Source: Anaeramoeba ignava BMAN
Taxonomy: Eukaryota > Protista > Anaeramoebae
Assembly (NCBI GenBank): GCA_028826165.1
Contig: JAPDFW010000103.1
Coordinates: 496,001 to 560,000, forward strand
Length of the DNA: 64,000 nucleotides
Direction of reading: 5' to 3'
Position numbers and translations under genes: made by a program. Numbering within the stretch: the stretch's first letter is position 1; each line of letters begins with the position of its first letter. The notes under the pieces are model-generated. The model did no database searches and had not been told where the DNA came from. It was given only the letters and a program-made list of their open reading frames with translations. Below, piece by piece: positions 1,319-49,225 of the stretch.

Positions 1319-4300
1319 ATGCAACATTTACTTGAAGGAATTCAAAATGAAGATATTTCTATTAAATATAATAGCATTATTGAATTAAATGAAAAGATTT
1401 GTCTTGCAACAGAAAAAACATTTCGTGGTTTTTCTTTAGAAAAATTTGTACCTGCAATTGTTAATCTTATTGAATTACCAGATTCACCTGAAATTAGTTG
1501 TAAATATAATTTAATTTTTTTATTTAATTTTTTCAATTAATTTTTTATTTTAAATTAATTTTTTATTTTAAATTAATTTTTTAATTAGTAATTGCTTCTC
1601 GTACTCTTACAAATTTACTTGAAACTCTCCCTGATTCTTATCATATTATTTCTTCTTTAGCAATTGATGTTTTACTTTCAAAAATTTTATCTATTGAATA
1701 TCTTGATCTTGCAGAAATAGCAATAGATGTAAAATTAAAATTCATTTATAAAATTAAAATTAAAATTAAAATTCATTTATAAAATTAAAATTGAAATTAA
1801 AAATTAAAATTCATTTATAAAATTAAAATTAAAATTAAAATTCATTTATAAAATTAAAATTAAAATTAAAATTAAAATTAAAATTAAAATTATAATTAAA
1901 ATTCATTTATAAAATTAAAATTAAAATTAAAATTAAAATTAAAATCAAAATTAAAATCAAAATTAAAATTAAAATTCATTTATAAAATTAAAATTCATTT
2001 ATTAAATTAAAATTAAAATTGAAATTAAAATTAAAATTAAAATTAAAATTAAAATTAAAATTAAAATTAATTTATAAAATTAAAATTAAAATTAAAATTA
2101 AAATTAAAATTAAAATTAAAAATTAAAATTCATTTATAAAATTAAAATAAATTAAAATTCAATTTAAAATTATAATTAAAATTAAAATTAAAATTCATTT
2201 ATAAATTGAAATTGAAATTAAAAATTAAAATTCATTTATAAAATTAAAATTAAAATTAAAATAAATTAAAATTAAAATTAAAATTAAAATTCATTTATAA
2301 AATTAAAATTAAAATAAATTAAAATTAAAATTCATTTATAAAATTAAAAAAAAGATAATTGAAAAAATATCAAGAAGAACCTTTAAAAGAATTTTAGAAA
2401 GTGGAGGAATGATTGCCTTACTTCAATTTATAGACTTTTTCCCATCAATTACACAAGAAAAAGCACTTTCAGCTATTGCAAATATGGCAAGAGAAATCCC
2501 ACAAAATTCTCTTGATAAAGTTACAGAAGCACTTCCTTTAATTATAAATCAATTAGAATCATCAAATAATAAAGGTTGGAATCAAATAATTTTATAAAAA
2601 AATAATTTTATAAAAAAATAATTTTATAAAAAAATAATTTTAATTTATTTATTAATTTGTTTGTTTTCATTTTGATTAGTTGTTGATCTTGCTTGTCTTG
2701 CAATATTTCGAATTAGCAAAAAGATAATATTTGAACCAACCTTTTTAACAATTTTATCGGATTCAAATTTATTAAAAAATATGGTTAATCTTCTTATTAA
2801 AGAATCACAAAATACTGGAACAATAAAATCAACTACATTTGCTTCAGTTGCAAGTTTTATCAATGATTTATGCTCAATTAATCCATCTATTGTTAAAATT
2901 TTATTTGAAATGGATCTTTATAATATTCTTAAAAAAATATTGATTGGCGATTCTTCACAAAATCAAATTGAAGATCGTAATTTATTAATATTTTAAAAAA
3001 AAAAATAAGCAATTTATTAAATATATTTTTAAAAAAAATATCAATTTAAATAGAATTTATAGATAACACAAATCTTGCGAATTCACCATCAAAGCAAATG
3101 ATTAATATTCCATATACAAGAAGTACAAATCAAATTTTTCATATCATTTCTCTTATCGAAGCTCAATTACCATTAATCCCACAAAATGTCATATCCAAAG
3201 AAATTTGGGATATAATACAAGAAGAGAATGAAATCAAATCGGAAATTCATTCAAATATTCTCGATCTTAAACAAGCAGAAAATTTACAAGCAGCTCATAT
3301 TGAATTAATTACAACTAGTCCAGAAATCCCAGAAAATTTAGCAGCAAATTTATTAGAGCCATTGATAATCACATTTACAAACTCAGTGGCGCCAGCATTA
3401 AAAAGAAAATGTCTGGTTTCATTGTTTAAAATGATTCACTTTAATTCACAAGAAAAACTCAAACAATTAGCTTTGCCTTTATTGAATTCGTTTTCTACAT
3501 TAATTTCTGAGTTGATTACTCAAAGAAAAGACCATATCCAAATTGGATTTGGGATTTTGCTTTCCCATTTGTTTTGCGAAAAATTACCGGAAATGTTTTG
3601 GAACATTTTTCAAAGAGATGGAATTTTTTATGAGTGTGAAAATCTTCTTAGTGTAACAAAAGAATGGATTGTTTCAAATGAGCAAAGCATTACTGATTTC
3701 AAAAAAGGATTGGAAATTCAATTGGAAAACGACAAAAACGAAATTGAAGAATTGAGAAAAGAAAAAGAAAACAAAGAAAACAGAAAACAAGAATTGCAGC
3801 AATCGTTCCAGAAACGAAAAGAAGAAATAGAAAAGGAAATGGAAGAATTCAAATCCAAAAACAAAGATGAGGAAAGTATTATTGAAGCAAACCGACAAAA
3901 CGAGCAAGAAATCAAGAAGTTAAACCAAAATATAACAAGAATCAGCAATCAGACCAAGTCAATCATACGCGCAATTTCAACCAAAACCAGAAGCATTTCT
4001 CAAGTGAAGGAAAAGCTTGAAAAATATACTCGTGTTCTTGAGAAATCCCAAATGAAAAAACTAGATTCAATGGATCAAGAAACAAATCAAAATATGGACC
4101 AAGAACCAATTAATGAAGATATGAAACAAGACTTGTTTTCTGATGATCAAGACGAAACAGATATAAAAGACTCATTCCAAGAAGAAAAAACTCGAAAGCT
4201 CGAATTATTTCGGATTTTGAGAGAAAAAGATCAACAATTTCTACTCGAGCATCGCGATGAAATTGAGCAAATGGTCGGTGAATTACCAAGATATGGAGAT

Positions 4301-7300
4301 GAGAACTTTTCCTTTTCTTTTTCAAAACCAAAAGAGCTAAAAAGAATTGAAAAACCAGCGCCCAAGGATGAACTTATTCAGAAGAAAATTATTGACGATT
4401 GGATTTTATTTACAACCCAAATATTTCTTGATAAATTTTTCTCTGATGAATTGAAAAAGAAATTTGGAGTTCAAGACTTGGGGTTGGAAAAGTTCAAACA
4501 ACTTGGGAAAGAATTGGTATCTGATAACAATAATAGTTTAGCTATTTTAAAAGAAATTGCGGATATTTTTCGCAAACATTCAAAATCTACATTCGAAATT
4601 CTTCAAAGTGGAATTATCCCATCTCTAATTCGCTATTTGACTCTTCCTCGGGAAATACAAGATATCACATCAAATACAGAAGATGTGGAGTTGGCTTCCA
4701 AGTTGCTTGATAATCTGGAAAAGTTTCACTCAACATTTTTTTATATTCCACAAGAGGAAAAAGTAATTATTGAAAATGAACAACAAGACAATCAAGAGAA
4801 TTTCAAAGAACGAGTGCCGATTATTGAAATGATTCGGCAGCTCCAAGAAGTCTTAAACAAAGTGGAGGATTTCCCATCAGAAGTTGATCCGCAATTTTCA
4901 TTCCATTTGGCAAGAAAACCGTTGAAAATTATGTTTGAAAAATCACCCAATGAAAAAACATTGAAACCACTTGGAAATGGATTTTCTACGTTTGATCCAT
5001 TGATAACAACAAATATTCTAGAAACAATTATTTGGGGAAAAGTGCGATTACCTATTGATGGATCTTTGCCTTATATTGATCCTGAAATTCTTGGCTTCGA
5101 AGAAAAGCAGCACAATCAACTATTCGAAGTTGATCCTGATGAAGTTCATTTGTCAGATCATCCTTTTTATAACCGTGAAAGTTTCCTTGATTTTAATTTG
5201 ATTAGTAGTAGCTTGGGAATCATCAAGCAAGATCCAAGTTATTTGGATAGCAATCGATATGAAGATCAATATCGTCCATATTCATATTTTAATCAATATT
5301 CAAAAGGTCCTTTTTCGATGCAAAGTGAAGATAAGTTTGAAGATTTATTCAGTATCAAATCAAAATTTGGAGAAAAGAATCAAGAGAAAGCTAAAATTAA
5401 AAAGTTTATGATTCGCAAGAAATTAAAATCATTGAAAAAGATGAAAAAGAAAATGAATAAAGAATATCAAGAAAGTGATTCAATTTCAATCACAAGTGAA
5501 AGTATAAGCAAAAGTACCAGTAAAAGCAAAAGTGAAAGTAAAAGTAAAAGTAAAAGTAAAAGCAAAAGTAAAAGCAGTGATGATGAATTTATGCTTATTG
5601 AACCAATTAAAAAAGAACCAATTAAAAAAGATAAAATTAAAAAAGATAAAATTAAAAAAGAACCAATCAAAAAAGATAAAATCAAAAAAGATAAAACCAA
5701 AAAGGAGAAAATCAAAAAAAAACCAATCAAAAAATATCACAAAAAATACCACAAAAAATTTGATGATAAAAAAGAAAAAAAATATGTTTCTCCGTTTCTT
5801 AAAGAACCAAAAAGTAAAGTTGAAAAGAAAGAACAACAAATTAAAATGGATGAAGATGACAACCAAAACTCAGAACAAAAAGCACTAAATAGTCAAGAAA
5901 AACAACAAGAATATATTTCCGAACTTGAAAAGTATGAAAAATTATTCCCAATAAACCAGAATAACCACAGATATCATGCTTTACAACTCTCATATATGGG
6001 GAAGAAATTGGATTATAATAAAGGATTATTTCAACAAATTTTTAAAATTTGGAGACAAAATCATGAGAAAGGAGTAGTGATTGGAAATTTATGGAAAGAA
6101 ACTATTGTTATTCGATATCAACGATTGTATCCATTTTCAGAAAGAATGGTTGAGTTGATGAAAGTTCAAGAACAAAATGCACAAAAGATGCAAATTGATT
6201 CAAAAAAAGAAATTTTGGAAAAGAAAAATGAAGCCAAAATTAAAATTAAAAACAAAAACAAAAACAAAAACAAAAACAAAAGTAATAAAAGAAAAATTGA
6301 AGACAATCAAGAGAATGTTGCGGTGAATATAAATAATAGCAACGAAAAAACGCAATTTTATGGAACAAAAGTTCCCGAAATTATTCAAATTTTATCCGAT
6401 CGCAAATTAAGAAGATTAGAATTTCCCGATTCGGATTTGAGATGTTTAGAGGCATTGGAGCTATTGTGGATATTGGAAACCATCAACCGACTTTATTCGC
6501 AAGAAATTGAGTCTGGAAAATCCGTGAAAGCAAGTGGTGTTCAAGTTCCACAAGAAGAATTTATTTCGCTAAGATTAACAGCAAAATTTACGCGACAAAT
6601 CGAAGACCCATTTATATTATTTTGCAACGCAATTCCATTTTGGTGCACGCAAATGATGCACAAAGGATATCAGTTTATGTTTCCATTTGAGAAAAGATTG
6701 CGCTATTTTTATGCGACATCCAACGAACCTTATCATTCTATGAAGCAAGTGATTAGCAATACAGAAAAATATGCACATCAATTCCGAAACATTAAATTGG
6801 GAAGAATCCCAAAATTCAAAGTGAAGGTATTGCGGAATAGAATTCTAGATTCTGCAATACGAATCCTTAATTCCCCACGAGGAATCGGCAGATCTTTACT
6901 TGATGTGGAGTATTTCGGAGAGGCTGGATTTGGATCCGGACCTTCCCAAGAGTTTTTCTATCTTGTATCAAGGGAATTGAGGAAGAAAAACTTGAAAATA
7001 TGGCATGATTCATCTTTCCAGAAGAACAAAAACGAAGAGAAAGATGAGGAAGAATATGTGGAATCACCAAACGGATTGTTTCCGAGATCGATATTTTCCC
7101 ATGATTCTCAGAAAATAATCTCAAATGACGAGCAAAACGAGAACCAAAAAATTGCAGATACATTTGAATTTATTGGGAAATTTGTCGCGCGAGCAATCAC
7201 AGATTCAAGAGTGACCGAGTTGCCTTTTTCGCAGGCTTTTTTCAAGGCAATTCTCGGGAAGGAGCTTGGATTCTCAGATCTCCAATCACTCGATCCTGAA

Positions 7301-7999
7301 TTTTCCAAGGCATTAAAGGAATTAAGCGATATATCGGATCAGTACAAAAAAACTGGCAACAAAAATATCATGTATAAAAACGCAAAATTTGAGGATCTTT
7401 TTATCAATTTTGTTCTTCCTGGGAACGATACTGAACTCAAACCAGGAGGCAAGGATATCTTTTTAAATCTGGATAATATCGATGAATATATTGATTTGAT
7501 TATCCGCGCAAGATTGAAAGAAGGAATATATAAGCAAGTTGCAAGTTTTGTAAAAGGATTCAATCAAATATTTCCGATTAAAAATCTGCGCGTTTTTTCG
7601 TTTGAAGAATTTGATGTTCTTTTGAATGGAAGTGTTGAGCAATGGGATGAGAATTTAATCAGAAAAAACATCAAATGCGCACATGGATATACAATTGAGA
7701 GTCGTGTTGTCGGTTATTTAATACAATTTATGGCTGATATGAGTCCTTCTCAACAAAGAAAATTTCTTCGTTTTATCACAGGAAGTTCTCGTTTGCCTGT
7801 TGGTGGGATTGCTAAATTAAACCCTCTTTTGACTGTTGTTAGACTTAGTGTCGAAAATATGAATCCTGATAATTATCTTCCTAGTGTTATGACTTGCGCT
7901 AATTATCTTAAAATTCCTCAGTATTCTTCAAAGGAAATTTTTCTTCAGAAATTTCAAATTGCTATTTCTGAAGGTCAATCAAGTTTTCATCTTTCTTAA
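1319..7999 (+). CDS. TRIP12: HECT E3 ubiquitin ligase, TRIP12/UFD4/UPL3 family (N-terminal ARM repeats, C-terminal HECT); 5 exons
   Basis: Exons 1319-1499, 1589-1728, 2355-2574, ~2680-2976, ~3055-7999 join at GT-AG sites. The N-terminus (IASRTLTNLLETLP...IEYLDLAE) matches TRIP12 ARM repeats. The C-terminus has LDVEYFGEAGFGSGPSQEFF, YLPSVMTCANYLKIPQYSS and terminal SFHLS. Confidence 0.92.
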
Positions 8000-18234: not shown

Positions 18235-21112
18235 TTAGAAATAATTTCGGATTGCTTTTGCAAATGGAATTGATGCATCAACAATAATAAATTTATCAGA
18301 TTCTTTAACTAATTTGATTTGACTCATTGGATGTGAATTAGTTGTAATAATTTTAGTAATTTTAGAATCAATTAATTTTTGGCAAACTGCTTCTGAAGTA
18401 ATTGCAAAATGTGAAATAACTGTATAAATTGATAATGCTCCATTATTTAAATAAGCATCAACTGCATGAAATAATGTTCCTCCACTTCTAATCATATCAT
18501 CATAAATAATAACATGCATTCCTTTAACTTCTCCAATTACTTCATGAACTTCAGTTTCTTCCATTTTTCTTGTTTTTCGAACAAATGCAACTGGTGTGTT
18601 ATTGAATTTCTTTGAATATGATGAAACCCATGCTGTTCTTCCTAAATCTGCTGATGCAAACATAAAAGTTCCTGGTTCTAAATTTAATTTTCTAACTCCT
18701 TCTGCAAGAATTTGTTCTCCATAAACTTCAAATGCAATTGTTGACTTTTTAATTTTAATTTTGAATATTTTAGATATTTTGGATATTTTAGATATTTTAA
18801 ATATTTTAGATATTTTGGATATTTTGGATATTTTAGATATTTTGAATATTTTGAATATTTTGAATATTTTGAATATTTTGAATATTTTGAATATTTTGAA
18901 TATTTTGGATATTTTAAATATTTTAGATATTTTAAATATTTTGAATATTTTGAATATTTTGAATATTTTGGATATTTTGGATATTTTGGATATTTTGAAT
19001 ATTTTGAATATTTTGAATATTTTGAATATTTTGGATATTTTAGATATTTTGAATATTTTGAATATTTTAGATATTTTAGATATTTTGGATATTTTGAATA
19101 TTTTGAATATTTTGGATATTTTGGATATTTTGAATATTTTAAATATTTTGAATATTTTGGATATTTTAGATATTTTGGATATTTTAAATATTTTGAATAT
19201 TTTGAATATTTTGAATATTTTAGATATTTTGGATATTTTAGATATTTTAAATATTTTAGATATTTTGGATATTTTAGATATTTTGAATATTTTGAATATT
19301 TTGAATATTTCATTTAAATTTAAATTTATTTTAATTTAAATAAAAGTCAAATAAAAGTAAAATAATAAAATTGAAATGTTTTTGTTTGATTGTTATTATT
19401 AAATAAAGAATTAAATTACTTCAAAATAATGGACAATTCCAGAAACATGAAGATCAAATAAGAAAAATATATTTCCTTCTCCATCTTTTGGGATTGAACT
19501 TAAAATTCTACAATTTGTTTTGCAAGTTACAACCTATTATTTAATTTTAATTTTAATTTTTAATTTTAATTTCAATTTTAATTTTAATTTTAATTTTAAT
19601 TTGAATTTTAATTTTAATTTTAAATTTTAATTTTAATTTTAATTTTAATTTTAAATTTAATTTAAATTTTAATTTTAATTTTAAATTTTAATTTTAATTT
19701 TAATTTTAATTTTATTTTTAATTTTAATTTTAATTTTATTTTTAATTTTAATTTTAATTTTAATTTTAATTTTAATTTTAATTTTTAATTTTGATTTTAA
19801 TTTTAATTTTAATTTTAATTTACCTCTCCTGATTTTGTTGCTCTTTCCAGTAATCAATAAAAAAATGGAAAAATAAAATTCCATTAATTATATCAAGGAA
19901 AAAAATATTTGGATAATAATATTATTAGTATTAATATTATTTGAAAATTATTATTATTATTATTTAAATTAAAGAATGAAATTAAAATAAAGGATATTTG
20001 TTGAATAACCCATAAATGGAATAACAAAAATTCTTCTTCTAGTTCCATAAGCAGAAAGAGCCATTCCAACACGAACAAGTTCTAAAAAGTCACTATCATA
20101 AGCAGTTGAAGAAACAAAAATAACAGTTTTATCAAGAAGATCAGATTTCTTATCAACATCAACTCTATAATATTCTTCTCCACCAGCAAATTGCTATTTA
20201 AAATATTATTTAGAATATTTAGAATATTTAGAATATTTAGAATATTTAGAATATTTAGAATATTTAGAATAATTAATATTATTTAGAATATTTAGAATAA
20301 TTAATATTATTTAGAATATTTAGAATATTTAATATTATTTAGAATATTTAATATTATTTAGAATATTAAGAATATTTAGAATATTTAGAATATTTAGAAT
20401 ATTTAATAATATTTAGAATATTTAATATTATTTAGAATATTTAGAATATTTAGAATATTTAGAATATTTAATATTATTTAGAATATTTAGAATATTTAGA
20501 ATATTTATAATATTTAGAATATTTAATATTATTTAGAATATTTAGAATATTTAATAATATTTAGAATATTTAGAATATTAAGAATATTAAGAATATTAAG
20601 AATATTTAGAATATTTAGAATATTTAGAATATTTAGAATATTTAGAATATTTAGAATATTTAGAATATTTAGAATATTTAGAATATTTAGAATATTTAGA
20701 ATATTTAGAATATTATTTAGAATATTTAATATTATTTAGAATATTTAGAATATTTAGAATATTAATTAAAATTATTTCAATAATATTTAACATTCCAAAT
20801 TTTCATTATTCCAATTTTAAATTAAAAAAGGAAAAAAAGAAAAGAAAAAGGAAAAAAAAAAGGAAAAAAGGGGATAATGTTTGAAACAAAATAAACTCAA
20901 AATATAATCAAGAATATTACTTTTCTATCCATTGCAACTCTTTCAAAATTATCTGTTCCTAACTTTTCAAGTAAAAGATCTGCAAAGTATTCCCCACTTT
21001 TAGTTGAAAGTATCATCACTTTATTTTTACCATTCTTTTTTTGAATTATTGGTGATTTTGGTTCAATTTCAGTTTCAATTTTAGTTTCAATTTTAGTTTT
21101 TTCGTCTGACAT
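18235..21112 (-). CDS. prs: Ribose-phosphate pyrophosphokinase (PRPP synthetase), bacterial-like, copy 1; 5 exons
   Basis: Exons 21112-20921, 20193-19998, 19849-19824, ~19533-19420, 18744-18235 give ...[11 protein letters not shown]...[34 protein letters not shown]...[15 protein letters not shown]...ASADLGR...[13 protein letters not shown] (PRPP-binding loop). Confidence 0.92.
19850..19997 (-). other. AT-AC (U12-type, minor spliceosome) intron, 148 nt, in PRPS copy 1
   Basis: On the minus strand it starts ATATCCTTT, contains TTTTCCTTGAT and ends TTAC. Removing it fuses A+TG and restores GYST-M-ERA in frame. Confidence 0.88.
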
Positions 21113-21543
21113 TTAATTTAACTTTAATTCTTATTGAAAGCAAAAAAATGAAAAGAAAAAATGAAAAAAATTTTGTTTTTCTTTTTGTTTCTTTTTCTTT
21201 TTTTTTGGAATTATGTAGTAGAAAAATATTAAAAGAATAAAAGAATTTTGATTTTGAATTTGATTTTGATTTTGATTTTGATTTTGAATTTGAATTTGAT
21301 TTTGATTTTGATTTTGATTTTGATTTTGATTATGATTTTGATTTTGATTTTAATTTTAATTTTGATTTTGATTTTGATTTTGATTTTTGATTTGAATTTT
21401 GATTTTGAATTTGATTTTGATTTTGATTTTGATTTTGATTTTGATTTTAATTTTAATTTTAATTTTGATTTTGATTTTGATTTTGATTTTGATTTTGATT
21501 TTGATTTTGATTTTGATTTTAATTTTGATTTTGATTTTGAAAA

Positions 21544-24500
21544 TTAGAAATAATTTCGGATTGCTTTTGCAAATGGAATTGATGCATCAACAATAATAAA
21601 TTTATCAGATTCTTTAACTAATTTGATTTGACTCATTGGATGTGAATTAGTTGTAATAATTTTGGTAATTTTAGAATCAATTAACTTTTGACAAACTGCT
21701 TCTGAAGTAATTGCAAAATGTGAAATAACTGTATAAATTGATAATGCTCCATTATTTAAATAAGCATCAACTGCATGAAATAATGTTCCTCCACTTCTAA
21801 TCATATCATCATAAATAATAACATGCATTCCTTTAACTTCTCCAATTACTTCATGAACTTCAGTTTCTTCCATTTTTCTTGTTTTTCGAACAAATGCAAC
21901 TGGTGTGTTGTTGAATTTCTTTGAATATGATGAAACCCATGCTGTTCTTCCTAAATCTGCTGATGCAAACATAAAAGTTCCTGGTTCTAAATTTAATTTT
22001 CTAACTCCTTCTGCAAGAATTTGTTCTCCATAAACTTCAAATGCAATTGTTGACTTTTTAATTTTAATTTTGAATATTTTAGATATTTTGGATATTTTAG
22101 ATATTTTAAATATTTTAGATATTTTGAATATTTTGAATATTTTGAATATTTTGAATATTTTGGATATTTTAGATATTTTGGATATTTTAAATATTTTGGA
22201 TATTTCATTTAAATTTAAATTTATTTTAATTTAAATAAAAGTCAAATAAAAGTAAAATAATAAAATTGAAATGTTTTTGTTTGATTGTTATTATTAAATA
22301 AAGAATTAATTTACTTCAAAATAATGGACAATTCCAGAAACATGAAGATCAAATAAGAAAAATATATTTCCTTCTCCATCTTTTGGGATTGAACTTAAAA
22401 TTCTACAATTTGTTTTGCAAGTTACAACCTATTATTTAATTTTAATTTTAATTTTAATTTTAATTTTAATTTTAATTTTAATTTTAATTTTAATTTTAAT
22501 TTTAATTTTAATTTAAATTTAAATTTTAATTTTAATTTTAATTTTAATTTTAATTTTAATTTTAATTTTAATTTTAATTTTAATTTTAATTTTTAATTTT
22601 AATTTAAATTTTAATTTTAATTTTAATTTTAATTTTTAATTTTAATTTTAATTTTAATTTACCTCTCCTGATTTTGTTGCTCTTTCCAGTAATCAATAAA
22701 AAAATGGAAAAATAAAATTCCATTAATTATATCAAGGAAAAAAATATTTTATTTGGATAATAATATTATTAATATTAATATTATTTGAAAATAATTATTA
22801 TTATTATTATTTAAATTAAAGAATGAAATTAAAATAAAGGATATTTGTTGAATAACCCATAAATGGAATAACAAAAATTCTTCTTCTAGTTCCATATCCA
22901 GAAAGAGCCATTCCAACACGAACAAGTTCTAAAAAGTCACCATCATAAGCAGTTGAAGAAACAAAAATAACAGTTTTATCAAGAAGATCAGATTTCTTAT
23001 CAACACCAATTCTATAATATTCTTCTCCACCAGCAAATTGCTATTTAAAATATTATTTAGAATATTTAGAATATTTAGAATATTTAGAATATTTAGAATA
23101 TTTAATAATATTTAGAATATTTAGAATATTTAGAATATTTAATAATATTTAGAATATTAATTCAAATTATTTAGAATATTTAGAATATTTAATAATATTT
23201 AGAATATTTAGAATATTAATTCAAATTATTTAGAATATTTAGAATATTTAAAATATTTAGAATATTTAGAATATTTAGAATATTTAATAATATTTAGAAT
23301 ATTTAGAATATTTAGAATATTAATAATATTTAGAATATTTAGAATATTTAGAATATTTAGAATATTTAATAATATTTAGAATATTTAATAATATTTAGAA
23401 TATTTAATATTATTTAGAATATTTAATATTATTTAGAATATTTAATATTATTTAGAATATTTAATAATATTTAGAATATTTAGAATATTTAATATTATTT
23501 AGAATATTAAGAATATTTAATATTTAGGAATATTTAGAATATTAAGAATATTTATAATATTATTATTTAGAATATTTAGATTATTTAGAATATTTAATAT
23601 TATTTAGAATATTTAGAATATTTAATAATATTTAGTATTATTTAGTATTATTTAGAATATTTTAGAATATTTAATAATATTTAGAATATTTAGAATATTA
23701 TTTAGAATATTTAGAATATTTAGAATATTTAGATTATTTAGAATATTTAGATTATTTAGAATATTTAATAATATTTAGAATATTTTAGAATATTTAGAAT
23801 ATTTAGATTATTTAGAATATTTAATATTATTTAGAATATTTAGAATATTTAGAATATTTAGAATATTTTAAAATTATTTAGAATATTTAATATTATTTAG
23901 AATATTTTAGAATATTTAGAATATTTAGAATATTTAATATTATTTAGAATATTTAAAATTATTTAAAAATATTTAGAATATTTAGAATATTTAGAATATT
24001 TTAAATATTTAATATTATTTAGAATATTTAATAATATTTAGAATATTTAATATTTAAGAATATTTAGAATATTTAATATTATTTAGAATATTTAATAATA
24101 TTTAGAATATTTAGAATATTTAGAATATTTAGAATATTTAGAATATTTAGAATATTTAATAATATTTAGAATATTTAGAATATTAAGAATATTAAGAATA
24201 TTTTGAATATTATTTAGAATATTTTGAATATTATTTAAAATTATTTCAATAATATTTAACATTCCAAATTTTCATTATTCCAATTTTAAATTAAAAAAAA
24301 AATAAAAGAAAAAGGGAAGGAAAAAAAAAGGAAAAAAGGGGATAATGTTTGAAACAAAATAAACTCAAAATCTAATCAAGAATATTACTTTTCTATCCAT
24401 TTCAACTTTTTCAAAATTATCTGTTCCTAACTTTTCAAGTAAAAGATCTGCAAAGTATTCCCCACTTTTAGTTGAAAGTATCATTGTTTTACTTTTGCAA

Positions 24501-24580
24501 TTCTTTTTTTGAATTATTGGTGATTTTGGTTCAATTTCAGTTTCAATTTTAGTTTCAATTTTAGTTTTTTCGTCTGACAT
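21544..24580 (-). CDS. prs: Ribose-phosphate pyrophosphokinase, tandem copy 2; 5 exons
   Basis: Same exon structure as copy 1. The last exon is protein-identical with synonymous changes; exons 1-2 have several amino-acid changes. Confidence 0.92.
22689..22844 (-). other. AT-AC (U12-type) intron, 156 nt, in PRPS copy 2
   Basis: Same ATATCCTTT donor, TTCCTTGAT branch motif and TTAC acceptor as copy 1. Confidence 0.88.
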
Positions 24581-46035: not shown

Positions 46036-46103
46036 AAGGGGATAATTTAAAGATAGAATGTAATGCTAAGTTTAAGATTCGGGTTCAAATCCCGACTTCT
46101 CCA
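46036..46103 (+). pseudogene. Degenerate tRNA-like copy (intact T-arm and 3' acceptor strand, eroded 5' half)
   Basis: TCGGG-TTCAAAT-CCCGA-CTTCTCC-A followed by a T-run; lies in a noisy region. Confidence 0.5.
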
Positions 46104-46188
46104 CACCTTTTTTGTTAAATTTATAATTATAAATAATCTATTTTTTGAATTTTTTTTTGCAAAAGGATTTGTTTAATTTAAATTAAAA

Positions 46189-46260
46189 TCAGAAGTAGTA
46201 TAAAGGTAAGTATGTGGGCTTTTCACGCCCATGATCCGAGTTCGAATCTCGGCTTCTGAG
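46189..46260 (+). tRNA. tRNA, anticodon TTC (Glu) on an Asp-type body, discriminator G
   Basis: TCAGAAG/CTTCTGA; GTAT/GTAT D-stem; TGGGC-TTTTCAC-GCCCA; CCGAG-TTCGAAT-CTCGG; downstream oligo-T. Confidence 0.82.
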
Positions 46261-46609
46261 CAATTTTTTTTGGAATAAATAATAAAAAGTGGAATAAATC
46301 TAATTGAAGTTGATTTAGAATATTTTTTTGAAATAAATAAATCTAATCAATCTAAATTAAATTGATTTAAATATTTTTTTTGAATTAAATAATAAAAAGT
46401 GGAATAAATCTAATTGAAGTTAATTTAGAATATTTTTTTGGAATAAATAATAAAAAGTGGAATAAATCTAATTGAAGTTAATTTAGAATATTTTTTTGAA
46501 ATAAATAAATCTAATCTAATCAATTTAAATTGATTTGAAATATTTTTTTGAAATAAATAAAAAATGGAATAAAAGTTGTAATTAATTAGAAAATTGTGAA
46601 TATTTTTGT

Positions 46610-46617
46610 TATAAAAG
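46610..46617 (+). promoter_or_regulatory. TATAAAAG box upstream of a tRNA gene (also at 44721, 47245, 47666, 49110)
   Basis: The same octamer lies 43-52 bp upstream of five tRNA-like genes. Confidence 0.6.
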
Positions 46618-46657
46618 ACACTAATTTATAAAATTTTAAAAGAAATTTGGATTAAAA

Positions 46658-46729
46658 CCGGAAGTAGTATAAAGGTAAGTATGTGGGCCTGTCACGCTCA
46701 AGATCCGAGTTCGAATCTCGGCTTCTGAG
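46658..46729 (+). tRNA. tRNA-Asp(GTC)-like; C1-A72 mismatch, G3-U70
   Basis: CCGGAAG/CTTCTGA-G; GTAT/GTAT; TGGGC-CTGTCAC-GCTCA; canonical T-arm. The D-stem, loop and G73 resemble eukaryotic tRNA-Asp. Confidence 0.82.
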
Positions 46730-47292
46730 TAATTTTTTTTGAATAAATAATAAAAAGTGGAATAAATCTAATTGAAGTTAATTTAGAATATTTTTTTGAA
46801 ATAAATAAATCTAATCAATCTAAATTAAATTAATTTGAAATATTTTTTTTGAAATAAATAATAAAAAGTGGAATAAATCTAATTTAAATTGATTTAGAAT
46901 ATTTTTTTGAAATAAATAAATCTAATCTATCTAATTGAAGTTAATTTAAAATATTCTTTGATTAAATAATAAAAAGTGGAATAAAACTAATTGAAGTTAA
47001 TTTAGAATATTTTTTTGAAATAAATAATAAAAAGTGGAATAAATCTAATTTAAATTGATTTAGAATATTTTTTTGAAATAAATAATAAAAAGTGGAATAA
47101 ATCTAATTGAAGTTAATTTAGAATATTTTTTTGAAATAAATAAATCTAATCAATCTAATTTAAATTAATTTGAAATATTTTTTTGAAATAAATAAAAAAT
47201 GGAATAAAAGTTGTAATTAATTAGAAAATTGTGAATATTTTTGTTATAAAAGACACTAATTTATAAAATTTTAAAAGAAATTTGGATTAAAA

Positions 47293-47363
47293 TCAGAAGT
47301 AGTATAAAGGTAAGTATGTGGGCCTTCACACTCAAGATCCGAGTTCGAATCTCGGCTTCTGAA
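47293..47363 (+). tRNA. tRNA-like gene with a 1-nt-short anticodon arm (TGGGC-CTTCAC-ACTCA); anticodon undetermined
   Basis: Body nearly identical to 46189 and 46658; the loop is 6 nt, or 8 nt on a 4-bp stem. Confidence 0.62.
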
Positions 47364-47714
47364 AAATTTTTTTTGATTAAATAATAAAAAGTGGAATAAA
47401 TCTAAATTAAATTGATTTAGAATATTTTTTTGAAATAAATAATAAAAAGTGGAATAAATCTAATTTAAATTGATTTAGAATATTTTTTTGAAATAAATAA
47501 ATCTAATCTAATCAATTTAGATTAATTTAAAATATTCTTTGATTAAATAATAAAAAGTGGAATAAAACTAATTGAAGTTAATTTAGAATATCTTCTGAAA
47601 TAAATAAATAATAAAAAGTTGAATAAAACTAATCAAAATTAATTGGAAAAATTTCAAATATTTGTTATAAAAGATGCTATTTTGAAAAATTTTAAAAAGA
47701 AATTTCAATTTAAA

Positions 47715-47785
47715 TCAGAAGTAGTTCAAAGGTAGAACGTGCGCCTTTCACGCCCAAGATCCGAGTTCAATTCCCGGCTTCTGAA
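47715..47785 (+). tRNA. tRNA-like gene, anticodon TTC (Glu), single mismatches in anticodon and T stems
   Basis: TCAGAAG/CTTCTGA; GTTC/GAAC; TGCGC-CTTTCAC-GCCCA; CCGAG-TTCAATT-CCCGG. Confidence 0.75.
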
Positions 47786-48088
47786 TAAATTTATTTTTTT
47801 GGAATTGATTTTTAATTTGTTTTGGAATTGATTTTTAATTTGTTTTGAATTGATTTGGAATTGATTTGGAATTGATTTTTAAATTGATTTTTAAATTGAT
47901 TTTTAATTTGATTTGGAATTGATTTTTAAATTGATTTTTAAATTGATTTGGAATTGATTTGGAATTGATTTTGTTTAAGATTTCTATTTTAAAATAAAGA
48001 ATAAAAAGTGGAACATAATATTAAATTTAAATGAGGAAGTTTGTCAAAAATTATTTTAAAAAATTTTTTGATAAATAATAAGAAAAAA

Positions 48089-48159
48089 GGGGAAGTATTT
48101 TAAAGGAAGAATGTGTCCTCCCAAAGCACACGGTCCGAGTTCAATTCCCGGCTTCTCCA
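48089..48159 (+). tRNA. tRNA-like gene, anticodon ambiguous (CCA/Trp or CCC/Gly depending on register), G3-U70 acceptor
   Basis: GGGGAAG/CTTCTCC-A; GTGTCCTCCCAAAGCAC arm; CCGAG-TTCAATT-CCCGG; T-run immediately downstream. Confidence 0.65.
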
Positions 48160-48201
48160 CTTTTTTTATCAAAATAAAGGAAAAAGGAAACAAGAAAATA
48201 A

Positions 48202-48272
48202 GCAGAAGTGGTATAAAGGCAGAATACAAAATTACCAATTTTGTGATCCGAGTTCGAATCTCGGCTTCTGCA
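48202..48272 (+). tRNA. tRNA-Gly-like with the unusual anticodon ACC
   Basis: GCAGAAG/CTTCTGC-A; CAAAA-TTACCAA-TTTTG; CCGAG-TTCGAAT-CTCGG. Confidence 0.78.
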
Positions 48273-48981
48273 AATGTTTCTTTTTTGGATAAATTTTTTT
48301 AGAATAATTAAATAATAAAATTAATTAAATTTGAATAAATAATAAAAAGTGGAATAAAACTAATCAAAACCATTTCAATCAACATTAATTTGAATAAATA
48401 ATAAAAAGTGGAATAAAACTAAATCAAGATTAATTTAGAATATTTTCTGAAATAAATAATAAAAAGTGGAATAAAACTAATTGAAGTTAATTTAGAATAT
48501 CTTCTGAAATAAATAATAAAAAGTGGAATAAATATAATCAAAACCATTTCAATCAACATTAATTTGAATAAATAATAAAAAGTGGAATAAAACTAATTCA
48601 AGATTAATTTAGAATATTTTCTGAAATAAATAATAAAAAGTGGAATAAATATAATCAAAACCATTTCAATCAACATTAATTTGATTAAATAATATTAAGT
48701 GGAATAAAACTAATTGAAGTTAATTTAGAATATCTTCTGAAATAAATAATAAAAAGTGGAATAAATATAATCAAAATCATTTCAATCAACATTAATTTGA
48801 TTAAATAATAAAAAGTGGAATAAAACTAATTGAAGTTAATTTAGAATATCTTCTGAAATAAATAAATAATAAAAAGTTGAATAAAACTAATCAAAATTAA
48901 TTGGAAAAAATTTCAAATATTTGTAATAAAAGATGCTATTTTGAAAAATTTTATAAAGAAATTTCAAATTAAAAATTTAAA

Positions 48982-49053
48982 TCGGAAGTAGTATAAAGGT
49001 GAGTATATGGGCTCTACACGCCCAAGATCCGGGTTCGATTCCCGGCTTCTGAA
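48982..49053 (+). tRNA. tRNA-like gene, anticodon TAC (Val) on an Asp-type body, C33, G3-U70
   Basis: TCGGAAG/CTTCTGA-A; GTAT/GTAT; TGGGC-TCTACAC-GCCCA; CCGGG-TTCGATT-CCCGG. Confidence 0.75.
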
Positions 49054-49152
49054 TAAAATTATTTTTTTTTAAATTAAAATTCTTTTTTGTTAAATTAAAT
49101 TAATTAGATTATAAAAGAAGAACTTTTAAAAATTTTAATTTATAAAAAAAAA

Positions 49153-49225
49153 GGAGAGATAGTATAAAGGAAAGAATGTGAGCCTGTCAAGCTCAAGATC
49201 CGGAGTTCGAGTCCCGGTCTCTCCA
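49153..49225 (+). tRNA. tRNA-like gene, anticodon GTC (Asp), discriminator A, 1-nt T-stem bulge
   Basis: GGAGAGA/TCTCTCC-A; TGAGC-CTGTCAA-GCTCA; CCGGAG-TTCGAGT-CCCGG. Confidence 0.72.

What the first reader, a model, noticed from the sequence alone, without database searches (positions are those of the whole stretch)
19850..19997. AT-AC minor-spliceosome (U12-type) intron inside a bacterial-type PRPP synthetase gene
Seen: the minus strand reads ...GGT TAT TCA ACA A|ATATCCTTT...TTTTCCTTGAT...GATTAC|TG GAA AGA GCA. Removing it restores GYSTMERA, which I recall as conserved in this PRS subfamily, and the same intron is in copy 2 (22689-22844). Known: ATATCCTT donors, TTCCTTRAY branch points and AC acceptors define U12-type introns. 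These are rare, usually sit in ancient eukaryotic genes, and are lost with the minor spliceosome in many protists. Inference: the organism has a working minor spliceosome. If the host gene is a bacterial transfer, this intron was gained de novo, which is rarely documented. If the organism is an anaerobic metamonad (unverified), the minor spliceosome itself would be notable.
Basis: partly seen in the sequence, partly recalled or inferred. Interest (0 to 1): 0.9.

Follow-up and report, generated by a model that had tools for sequence, protein, structure and literature searches.

The report
Real U12-type intron, already reported lineage
The AT-AC intron in the two tandem PRPP-synthetase genes of the anaerobic protist Anaeramoeba ignava is real and is spliced exactly as predicted, but AT-AC introns and a likely minor spliceosome in this strain were already reported in a 2024 paper's supplement.

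Summary
Observation confirmed. On the minus strand, 19997-19850 (148 nt) and 22844-22689 (156 nt) begin ATATCCTTT, carry TTCCTTGAT and end in AC. Removing them joins GYST + M (split codon A|TG) + [15 protein letters not shown] is present in about half of the full-length homologues. A public-run contig skips exactly 19850-19997.

The genome is Anaeramoeba ignava (Metamonada): two NCBI A. ignava proteins are encoded at 100% identity. It holds a U6atac-like gene separate from a canonical U6, a PDCD7/59K homologue and an SNRNP25/25K homologue. It also holds further AT-AC introns with the same signals in KTI12, two GOST-type 7TM paralogues, an Ank-DHHC gene and ATG9. U12, U11 and U4atac snRNAs were not found with the limited searches possible.

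Not new in kind. Nat Commun 2024 (PMC11550330, Suppl. Note 1) already reports 33 AT-AC introns in this strain and infers a minor spliceosome. Other first readers of this scan flagged similar introns and a U6atac gene elsewhere in this genome.

"Bacterial-type" and "de novo gain" remain unresolved.

The parts
19850..19997 (-). AT-AC (U12-type) intron of PRS copy 1, 148 nt, phase 1
   Evidence: Sequence. An X1 contig skips exactly these bases. It is the only junction that keeps GYST-M-ERA.
19989..19997 (-). 5' splice site ATATCCTTT
   Evidence: Its UCCUU is complementary to the AAGGA of the AAGGAGAGA box in the U6atac candidate.
19892..19900 (-). Branch-site-like motif TTCCTTGAT; the branch A at 19893 is 43 nt from the 3' splice site
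   Evidence: The same motif occurs in other AT-AC introns of this genome at 12-38 nt.
19850..19851 (-). 3' splice site AC
19998..20193 (-). Exon 2 of copy 1 (196 nt; peptide ends ...PFMGYST plus the first base of the Met codon)
   Evidence: Pfam Pribosyltran_N 23.1 bits for this exon alone. X1 contig positions 683-878 lie on it.
19824..19849 (-). Exon 3 of copy 1, a 26-nt micro-exon (TG + ERATKSGE)
   Evidence: X1 contig positions 657-682 lie on it.
20921..21112 (-). Exon 1 of copy 1. A GT-AG intron (20194-20920) filled with an AATATTCT-type repeat follows it.
   Evidence: The A. flamelloides orthologue has an intron at the same position.
19420..19533 (-). Exon 4 of copy 1. A GT-AG intron (19534-19823) made of (AAATT)n precedes it.
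   Evidence: VVTCKTN...HYFE aligns with homologues.
18235..18744 (-). Exon 5 of copy 1, stop codon included
   Evidence: Pfam Pribosyl_synth 49 bits and NCBIfam PRS models. 2768 homologues at E-value up to 0.001.
22689..22844 (-). AT-AC intron of PRS copy 2, 156 nt, with the same ATATCCTTT, TTCCTTGAT and AC
   Evidence: Copy 2 is 96% identical to copy 1 over this stretch.
21544..24580 (-). PRS copy 2 as a whole: exons 24580-24389, 23040-22845, 22688-22663, 22428-22315 and 22053-21544
   Evidence: Read. The exon 5 peptide is identical to that of copy 1.

Best explanation
The stretch is a genuine U12-type (AT-AC) spliceosomal intron. It sits in phase 1 inside the catalytic-loop motif GYST|MERA of the only PRPP-synthetase genes of Anaeramoeba ignava, a tandem pair. 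Shown here: the sequence signals, removal at exactly these boundaries in a transcript-like contig, and the presence of a U6atac-like snRNA and two minor-spliceosome-specific proteins. Inferred: U11 pairs with ATATCCTTT; U12 pairs with TTCCTTGAT, or with a weaker site nearer the 3' end; U6atac then replaces U11 through its AAGGAGAGA box; and the intron is cut out by the minor spliceosome. The flanking GT-AG introns are removed by the major spliceosome, across a 26-nt micro-exon.
For: The donor, branch motif and AC acceptor are present in both copies. The junction restores GYSTMER, which homologues conserve. No GT-AG alternative keeps the motif. The X1 contig skips 19850-19997 exactly, has no depth in the intron, and its length fits fully spliced exons 2-5. 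G000 has no intronless copy. The U6atac candidate at C71:58882-58994 scores 29.9 bits, E-value 8.1e-5, covers the whole model and carries AAAGGAGAGAUGGUUAGCA. It is distinct from the canonical U6 on C70, which scores 88 bits. PDCD7 scores 67 bits. The SNRNP25 domain scores 57 bits, and NCBI names that protein U11/U12 25 kDa [A. ignava]. Other AT-AC introns carry the same signals, and the Pfam profile continues across the junction: KTI12 1-225|231-271, GOST_TM 61-141|144-186, Ank|DHHC, and ATG9. Published: 33 AT-AC introns in this strain.
Against: No U12, U11 or U4atac snRNA was found. Those searches scored only a few dozen of thousands of candidates, or relied on guessed patterns. The U6atac match is below Rfam's gathering score (29.9 against 33). 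The best branch motif is 43 nt from the 3' site, whereas U12 introns usually have about 10-20 nt. Run X1 is not on record as RNA, and only contigs, not reads, were available.
Confidence: 0.85

Rival explanations
1. The minor spliceosome removes the intron, but the branch point is not the TTCCTTGAT A at 19893. It is a weaker site nearer the 3' end, for example the A at 19866 in TTTTTCCATTTT. The consensus-like motif 43 nt upstream would then be a relic or a coincidence.
For: The usual U12 branch-to-3' spacing is short (own knowledge). KTI12, one GOST paralogue, DHHC and ATG9 show 12-17 nt. The published note found no conserved branch motif.
Against: The GOST paralogue L037 has its only good motif 38 nt from an AC acceptor, and homology to its sister gene fixes that acceptor. 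Long spacing therefore seems tolerated here. The nearer candidates match the consensus poorly.
Confidence: 0.3
2. This is an AT-AC intron removed by the major (U2-type) spliceosome.
For: U2-type AT-AC introns exist (own knowledge; also stated). No U12 or U11 snRNA was found here.
Against: The donor is the full U12 consensus ATATCCTTT, not a U2-type donor. A U12-type branch motif is present. U6atac-like RNA and the 59K and 25K proteins exist in the genome.
Confidence: 0.06
3. The skipped form in run X1 is DNA, from an intronless allele, a retrocopy or another strain, and not spliced RNA. Splicing would then be unproven.
For: X1's kind is not on record. The contig differs from copy 1 at one base (20160) and matches neither copy exactly.
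Against: G000 holds only the two intron-bearing copies. X1 has no depth on unique intron bases. The contig length (656 bases before exon 3) equals exon 4 plus exon 5 plus 32 nt, as expected if all introns are removed. RNA-seq of this strain exists.
Confidence: 0.04

Closest known systems
U12-type AT-AC introns of animals, plants and Acanthamoeba (classical minor introns)
   Same: The /ATATCCTTT donor, a TTCCTTRAY-type branch motif, a terminal AC, a single such intron among GT-AG introns, and a U6atac with the AAGGAGAGA box.
   Different: The branch motif is 43 nt from the 3' site. The intron is extremely AT-rich. It borders a 26-nt micro-exon. The partner U12, U11 and U4atac RNAs are not yet identified.
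The AT-AC and (G/A)TATCCTTT introns reported for Anaeramoeba ignava BMAN (Nat Commun 2024, PMC11550330, Suppl. Note 1 and Table S3B)
   Same: Same genome and same class: 33 AT-AC introns, 32 introns with the 5' motif, and the authors' inference of a minor spliceosome.
   Different: Here seven AT-AC introns show TTCCTT(T)GAY, though six of them were found by searching for that motif. At least the KTI12 AT-AC intron is absent from the public gene model, which reads into the intron and stops.
PRPP synthetase, GYSTMER-type clade, of metamonads and Entamoeba
   Same: Pribosyltran_N plus Pribosyl_synth domains, and 39-52% identity over the exon 5 peptide to Blattamonas, Dysnectes, Aduncisulcus, Entamoeba marina and A. 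flamelloides proteins.
   Different: None of the homologous genes examined has an intron at this site. A. flamelloides shares only introns 1 and 4. Blattamonas has a GT-AG intron 4 codons upstream. Aduncisulcus is intronless.

Membership tests
U12-type (minor) spliceosomal intron | Extended 5' splice site /RTATCCTT | tested here: met
   ATATCCTTT at 19997-19989 and 22844-22836.
U12-type (minor) spliceosomal intron | Branch-site motif TTCCTTRAY | tested here: met
   TTCCTTGAT at 19900-19892, and the same motif in copy 2.
U12-type (minor) spliceosomal intron | Short, constrained distance from the branch site to the 3' splice site (about 10-20 nt) | tested here: not met
   43 nt here. Other AT-AC introns of this genome show 12, 14, 17, 12 and 38 nt.
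U12-type (minor) spliceosomal intron | Excision at the predicted AT-AC boundaries in transcripts | tested here: met
   The X1 contig skips exactly 19850-19997. Caveat: these are contigs, and the run's kind is not on record.
U12-type (minor) spliceosomal intron | Genome encodes the minor-specific snRNAs U11, U12, U4atac and U6atac | tested here: inconclusive
   A U6atac-like gene scores 29.9 bits (gathering score 33) and has the diagnostic box. U12, U11 and U4atac were not found by heavily filtered or pattern searches.
U12-type (minor) spliceosomal intron | Genome encodes minor-spliceosome-specific proteins | tested here: met
   PDCD7/59K scores 67 bits. SNRNP25/25K scores 57 bits and is named as such by NCBI. 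A zf-U1 ORF scoring 31 bits could be 20K or U1C. zf-U11-48K was not found.
U12-type (minor) spliceosomal intron | Splicing depends on U12 and U6atac | not testable with these tools
   Needs snRNA knock-down, cross-linking or lariat mapping.
Ribose-phosphate diphosphokinase (PRPP synthetase) | N-terminal PRS domain plus PRTase/Pribosyl_synth domain | tested here: met
   Searched exon by exon. Pribosyltran_N scores 23.1 bits on exon 2 alone, below the cut-off of 25. Pribosyl_synth scores 49.1 bits, Pribosyltran 34.9 bits, and TIGR01251 85 bits on exon 5.
Bacterial-origin (laterally transferred) gene | Eukaryotic sequences nested within a bacterial clade with support | tested here: inconclusive
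   In the quick maximum-likelihood tree, the metamonad sequences and two prokaryote-context sequences sit in one unresolved group. The pattern-based scan of prokaryote genomes found only one distant hit, at 26% identity.

The most novel reading that the evidence does not exclude
The AT-AC intron was gained in the A. ignava lineage after its split from A. flamelloides. It would be part of a lineage-specific spread of AT-AC U12-type introns: at least 33 in A. ignava against none in A. flamelloides. That would make it a datable, recent U12-type intron gain in a housekeeping gene. In this lineage U12 would also tolerate branch-to-3' distances of about 40 nt.
Probability: 0.3. Interest if true: 0.6.

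Novelty: already known. Interest (0 to 1): 0.35.

Why it matters
Metamonads studied earlier (diplomonads, parabasalids, Kipferlia, Monocercomonoides) were described with major-type or hybrid snRNAs only. A 263-species survey saw no strong evidence of minor introns or minor snRNAs in any Excavata species it analysed. Anaeramoeba therefore shows that the minor spliceosome survived in at least one metamonad branch, which bears on how often it was lost. That point is already made, briefly, in the supplement of the 2024 genome paper.
- named parts: U6atac, 59K and 25K;
- evidence that a canonical branch motif does exist;
- unusually long branch-to-acceptor spacing in two genes;
- an AT-AC intron missed by the public annotation, which truncates KTI12;
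- a case where the sister species' orthologue lacks the intron.

Tried and rejected
U12 snRNA:
- The Rfam RF00007 genome search gave no match, but only 42 of 2212 candidates were scored.
- The human-like 26-mer with up to 3 mismatches gave none.
- GCCTTAAAC..AGTAAGGAA gave none.
- TGCC..GTAAGGAA gave two identical hits inside coding sequence.
- CCTTAAAC..AAGGAA gave one chance hit.
- TGCC..GCAAGGAA gave ten hits. Most lie in open reading frames and none scored as U12 at E-value up to 1.
- AAGGAAAA..CTACTTT gave 14 hits against 145 for the control, and none scored.

U11 and U4atac:
- The Rfam genome searches gave no match.
- A U4atac guess built from complementarity to U6atac, AACC..GAGTTGC, hit at chance level.
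- The attractive pair on C68 lies in duplicated, coding-like sequence without snRNA features.

Other:
- zf-U11-48K gave no match.
- The other two ATATCCTTT sites in the window are antisense to coding ORFs.
- The hits L016, L019, L020, L035, L036 and L041 of the two-motif pattern are coding or not at exon breaks.
- The prokaryote-genome scan for close PRS relatives found only one Victivallaceae hit, at 26% identity.
- The PRS tree was too poorly resolved to call a transfer.
- No gene record for the Entamoeba marina protein was available.
- No RNA run is on record for this stretch.

Full report
**Observation.** On the minus strand the window reads GGT TAT TCA ACA A, then ATATCCTTT..., then TTTTCCTTGAT..., then GATTAC, then TG GAA AGA GCA. 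The intron runs from 19997 to 19850 (148 nt). The second gene copy has the same structure at 22844-22689 (156 nt). The 9-mer RTATCCTTT is not enriched in the window: there are 4 sites against 3.08 expected. The two other sites lie antisense within long coding ORFs and are chance matches. The case therefore rests on where the motif sits, not on the motif itself.

**Gene model.**
- I read five exons for copy 1: 21112-20921, 20193-19998, 19849-19824, 19533-19420 and 18744-18235. Copy 2 has matching exons.
- The three other introns are GT-AG and are filled with microsatellites.
- The exons were searched one by one, by reference. I did not build or search a joined spliced protein. Only the single split codon A|TG (Met) was read across the junction.
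- Exon 2 matches the N-terminal PRS domain and exon 5 the Pribosyl_synth/PRTase domain.
- An exhaustive search with the exon 5 peptide found 2768 relatives.
- About half of the full-length relatives listed carry GYSTMER or a near variant at the matching place, followed by sequence that aligns with exons 3 and 4.
- I enumerated every in-frame, stop-free donor/acceptor pair around the site. Only 19998>19849 keeps [13 protein letters not shown]. All GT-AG options delete the motif.

**Transcript evidence.**
- No run on record as RNA holds the stretch. One run of unrecorded kind, X1 (Logan contigs), holds 0.41 of the words.
- Laid on 19824-20193, one 891-nt contig skips exactly 19850-19997, with ends GT..AT on the plus strand, which is AT..AC on the gene strand.
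- It has 26 and 196 matching bases on the two sides and no depth anywhere in the intron.
- The 656 contig bases that precede exon 3 equal exon 4 (114) plus exon 5 (510) plus 32 nt, as expected for a fully spliced mRNA. That part lies outside the stretch laid, so it is an inference.
- The genome has only the two intron-bearing copies and no intronless one. Spliced RNA is therefore by far the likeliest source.
- The contig differs from copy 1 at one base (20160) and is not copy 2 either.

**Organism.**
- A HECT ligase in the window has its best named relative in Anaeramoeba ignava.
- That A. ignava protein is encoded at 100% identity elsewhere in G000.
- A second ORF of G000 is 100% identical to an NCBI A. 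ignava protein.
- G000 is 42.8 Mb in 147 contigs, and the window averages roughly 17% GC. This fits the published description of strain BMAN: 19.36% GC and one sixth the size of the A. flamelloides genomes.

**Minor-spliceosome parts.**
- Rfam's U6atac model matches C71:58882-58994 over its whole length. The score is 29.9 bits, just under the gathering score of 33, with E-value 8.1e-5 on the locus.
- The match reads AAAGGAGAGAUGGUUAGCA, the U6atac-specific version of the catalytic region. Its AAGGA is complementary to the UCCUU of the donor.
- A canonical U6 with ACAGAGAAGAUUAGCA sits on another contig at 88 bits. The U6atac candidate is therefore a second, distinct gene.
- PDCD7 (U11/U12-59K) is matched at 67 bits by an ORF on C76.
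- The SNRNP25 ubiquitin-like domain is matched at 57 bits by a 145-aa ORF on C116. NCBI names that protein U11/U12 snRNP 25 kDa protein.
- An ORF 196 kb downstream on the same contig, flagged by another reader as ZMAT5, has a U1-type zinc finger (31 bits). Pfam cannot tell 20K from U1C.
- U12, U11 and U4atac were not found. The genome-wide Rfam searches scored only a few dozen of thousands of candidates, and my pattern guesses gave only chance hits. This is a gap in the evidence, not evidence of absence.

**Other AT-AC introns.** Searching the genome for ATATCCTT followed within 10-100 nt by TTCCTTRAY gave 12 sites against 3 for the reversed control. Besides the two PRS copies, four sites lie exactly at exon breaks, and the Pfam profile continues across the gap in the first two:
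- KTI12: profile 1-225 before the intron and 231-271 after it.
- A GOST-type seven-transmembrane gene: profile 61-141 before and 144-186 after.
- Its paralogue, with an intron at the same position.
- An ankyrin-DHHC palmitoyltransferase.

An ATG9 gene, found through Pfam and not through the branch motif, has a 373-nt AT-AC intron.

Branch-to-acceptor distances are 12, 14, 17 and 12 nt, but 38 nt in the GOST paralogue and 43 nt in PRS. The PRS spacing fails the usual U12 rule, yet it has a precedent in this genome. Which A is actually used remains open.

**Evolution.**
- P0024 of A. flamelloides finds only the two window copies in A. ignava, so these are the sole PRS genes there. The published gene-family table also lists two adjacent BMAN genes.
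- The A. flamelloides gene shares the positions of introns 1 and 4. It lacks both the AT-AC intron and the next intron, which lie 26 nt apart.
- One joint loss in A. flamelloides explains this about as well as two gains in A. ignava.
- Blattamonas genes have other introns; the nearest is a GT-AG intron 4 codons upstream. The Aduncisulcus gene has none.
- Named relatives are metamonads and Entamoeba marina.
- Two relatives at 46% identity sit in dense, prokaryote-like gene rows beside NAD-synthesis genes.
- A quick maximum-likelihood tree leaves these groups unresolved. 'Bacterial-type' and 'gained de novo' can be neither confirmed nor refuted here.

**Prior knowledge.**
- The main texts of the Anaeramoeba papers do not mention U12.
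- Supplementary Note 1 of the 2024 genome paper does. It reports 33 AT-AC introns in BMAN and none in A. flamelloides. It reports 32 introns starting (G/A)TATCCTTT, and concludes that the lineage probably has a minor spliceosome. It also states that no conserved branch motif was seen.
- Broader surveys found no strong evidence of minor introns or minor snRNAs in the excavates they analysed. Metamonad spliceosome studies described only major-type components.
- The finding is therefore correct, but the class is already documented for this strain.
- The public KTI12 model (270 aa) reads into its AT-AC intron and stops, losing the last exon. The published count is thus a lower bound.
- Other first readers of this scan independently flagged AT-AC introns and a U6atac gene on other pieces of this genome. 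I treated these as leads only.

Noticed in passing
window 18235-24580 (minus strand): The PRS gene is a recent tandem duplicate, 96% identical over exon 2, the intron and exon 3, with identical exon 5 peptides. Its GT-AG introns are almost wholly microsatellite: an AATATTCT-type repeat of about 0.7-1.3 kb, (AAATT)n of about 0.25-0.3 kb, and an AAATATYC-type repeat. These two genes are the only PRS genes found in the genome.
   Followed up: partly
L018 (G000:C83, about 361500-362420, minus strand): The public A. ignava KTI12 protein (270 aa) ends ...QKRKISFLK, which reads through an unannotated AT-AC intron into a stop. The real last exon, matching KTI12 profile positions 231-271, lies 86 nt downstream.
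   Followed up: yes
L017 (G000:C64, about 391790) and L037 (G000:C79, about 162235): Two GOST/7TM paralogues share an AT-AC intron at the same position. Their branch-motif-to-acceptor distances are 12 and 38 nt, which suggests U12-type spacing is relaxed in this organism.
   Followed up: partly
window 46038-49225 (plus strand): A cluster of nine tRNA genes lies within 3.2 kb, all on one strand.
   Followed up: no
L027 and L028 (metagenomic contigs with PRS relatives P0012 and P0020): In prokaryote-like contigs this PRS clade sits next to NAD synthase, nicotinamidase-like and nucleotidyltransferase genes. This hints at a role in NAD salvage there.
   Followed up: no
window 3098-7999 (plus strand) and G000 C70, C115, C78, C7, C1: A TRIP12/UPL-type HECT ligase belongs to a family of at least six paralogues in the genome, 51-66% identical in the HECT domain.
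   Followed up: no
L072:576-1010 (G000:C93:755975-756409): A 145-aa ORF begins with a U1-type zinc finger (31 bits). It could be U11/U12-20K (ZMAT5) or U1C; Pfam cannot tell them apart.
   Followed up: partly
window 20160: The transcript-like contig of run X1 carries T where the assembly has C on the plus strand, and it matches neither gene copy exactly. This could be an allele, a strain difference or an assembly error.
   Followed up: no
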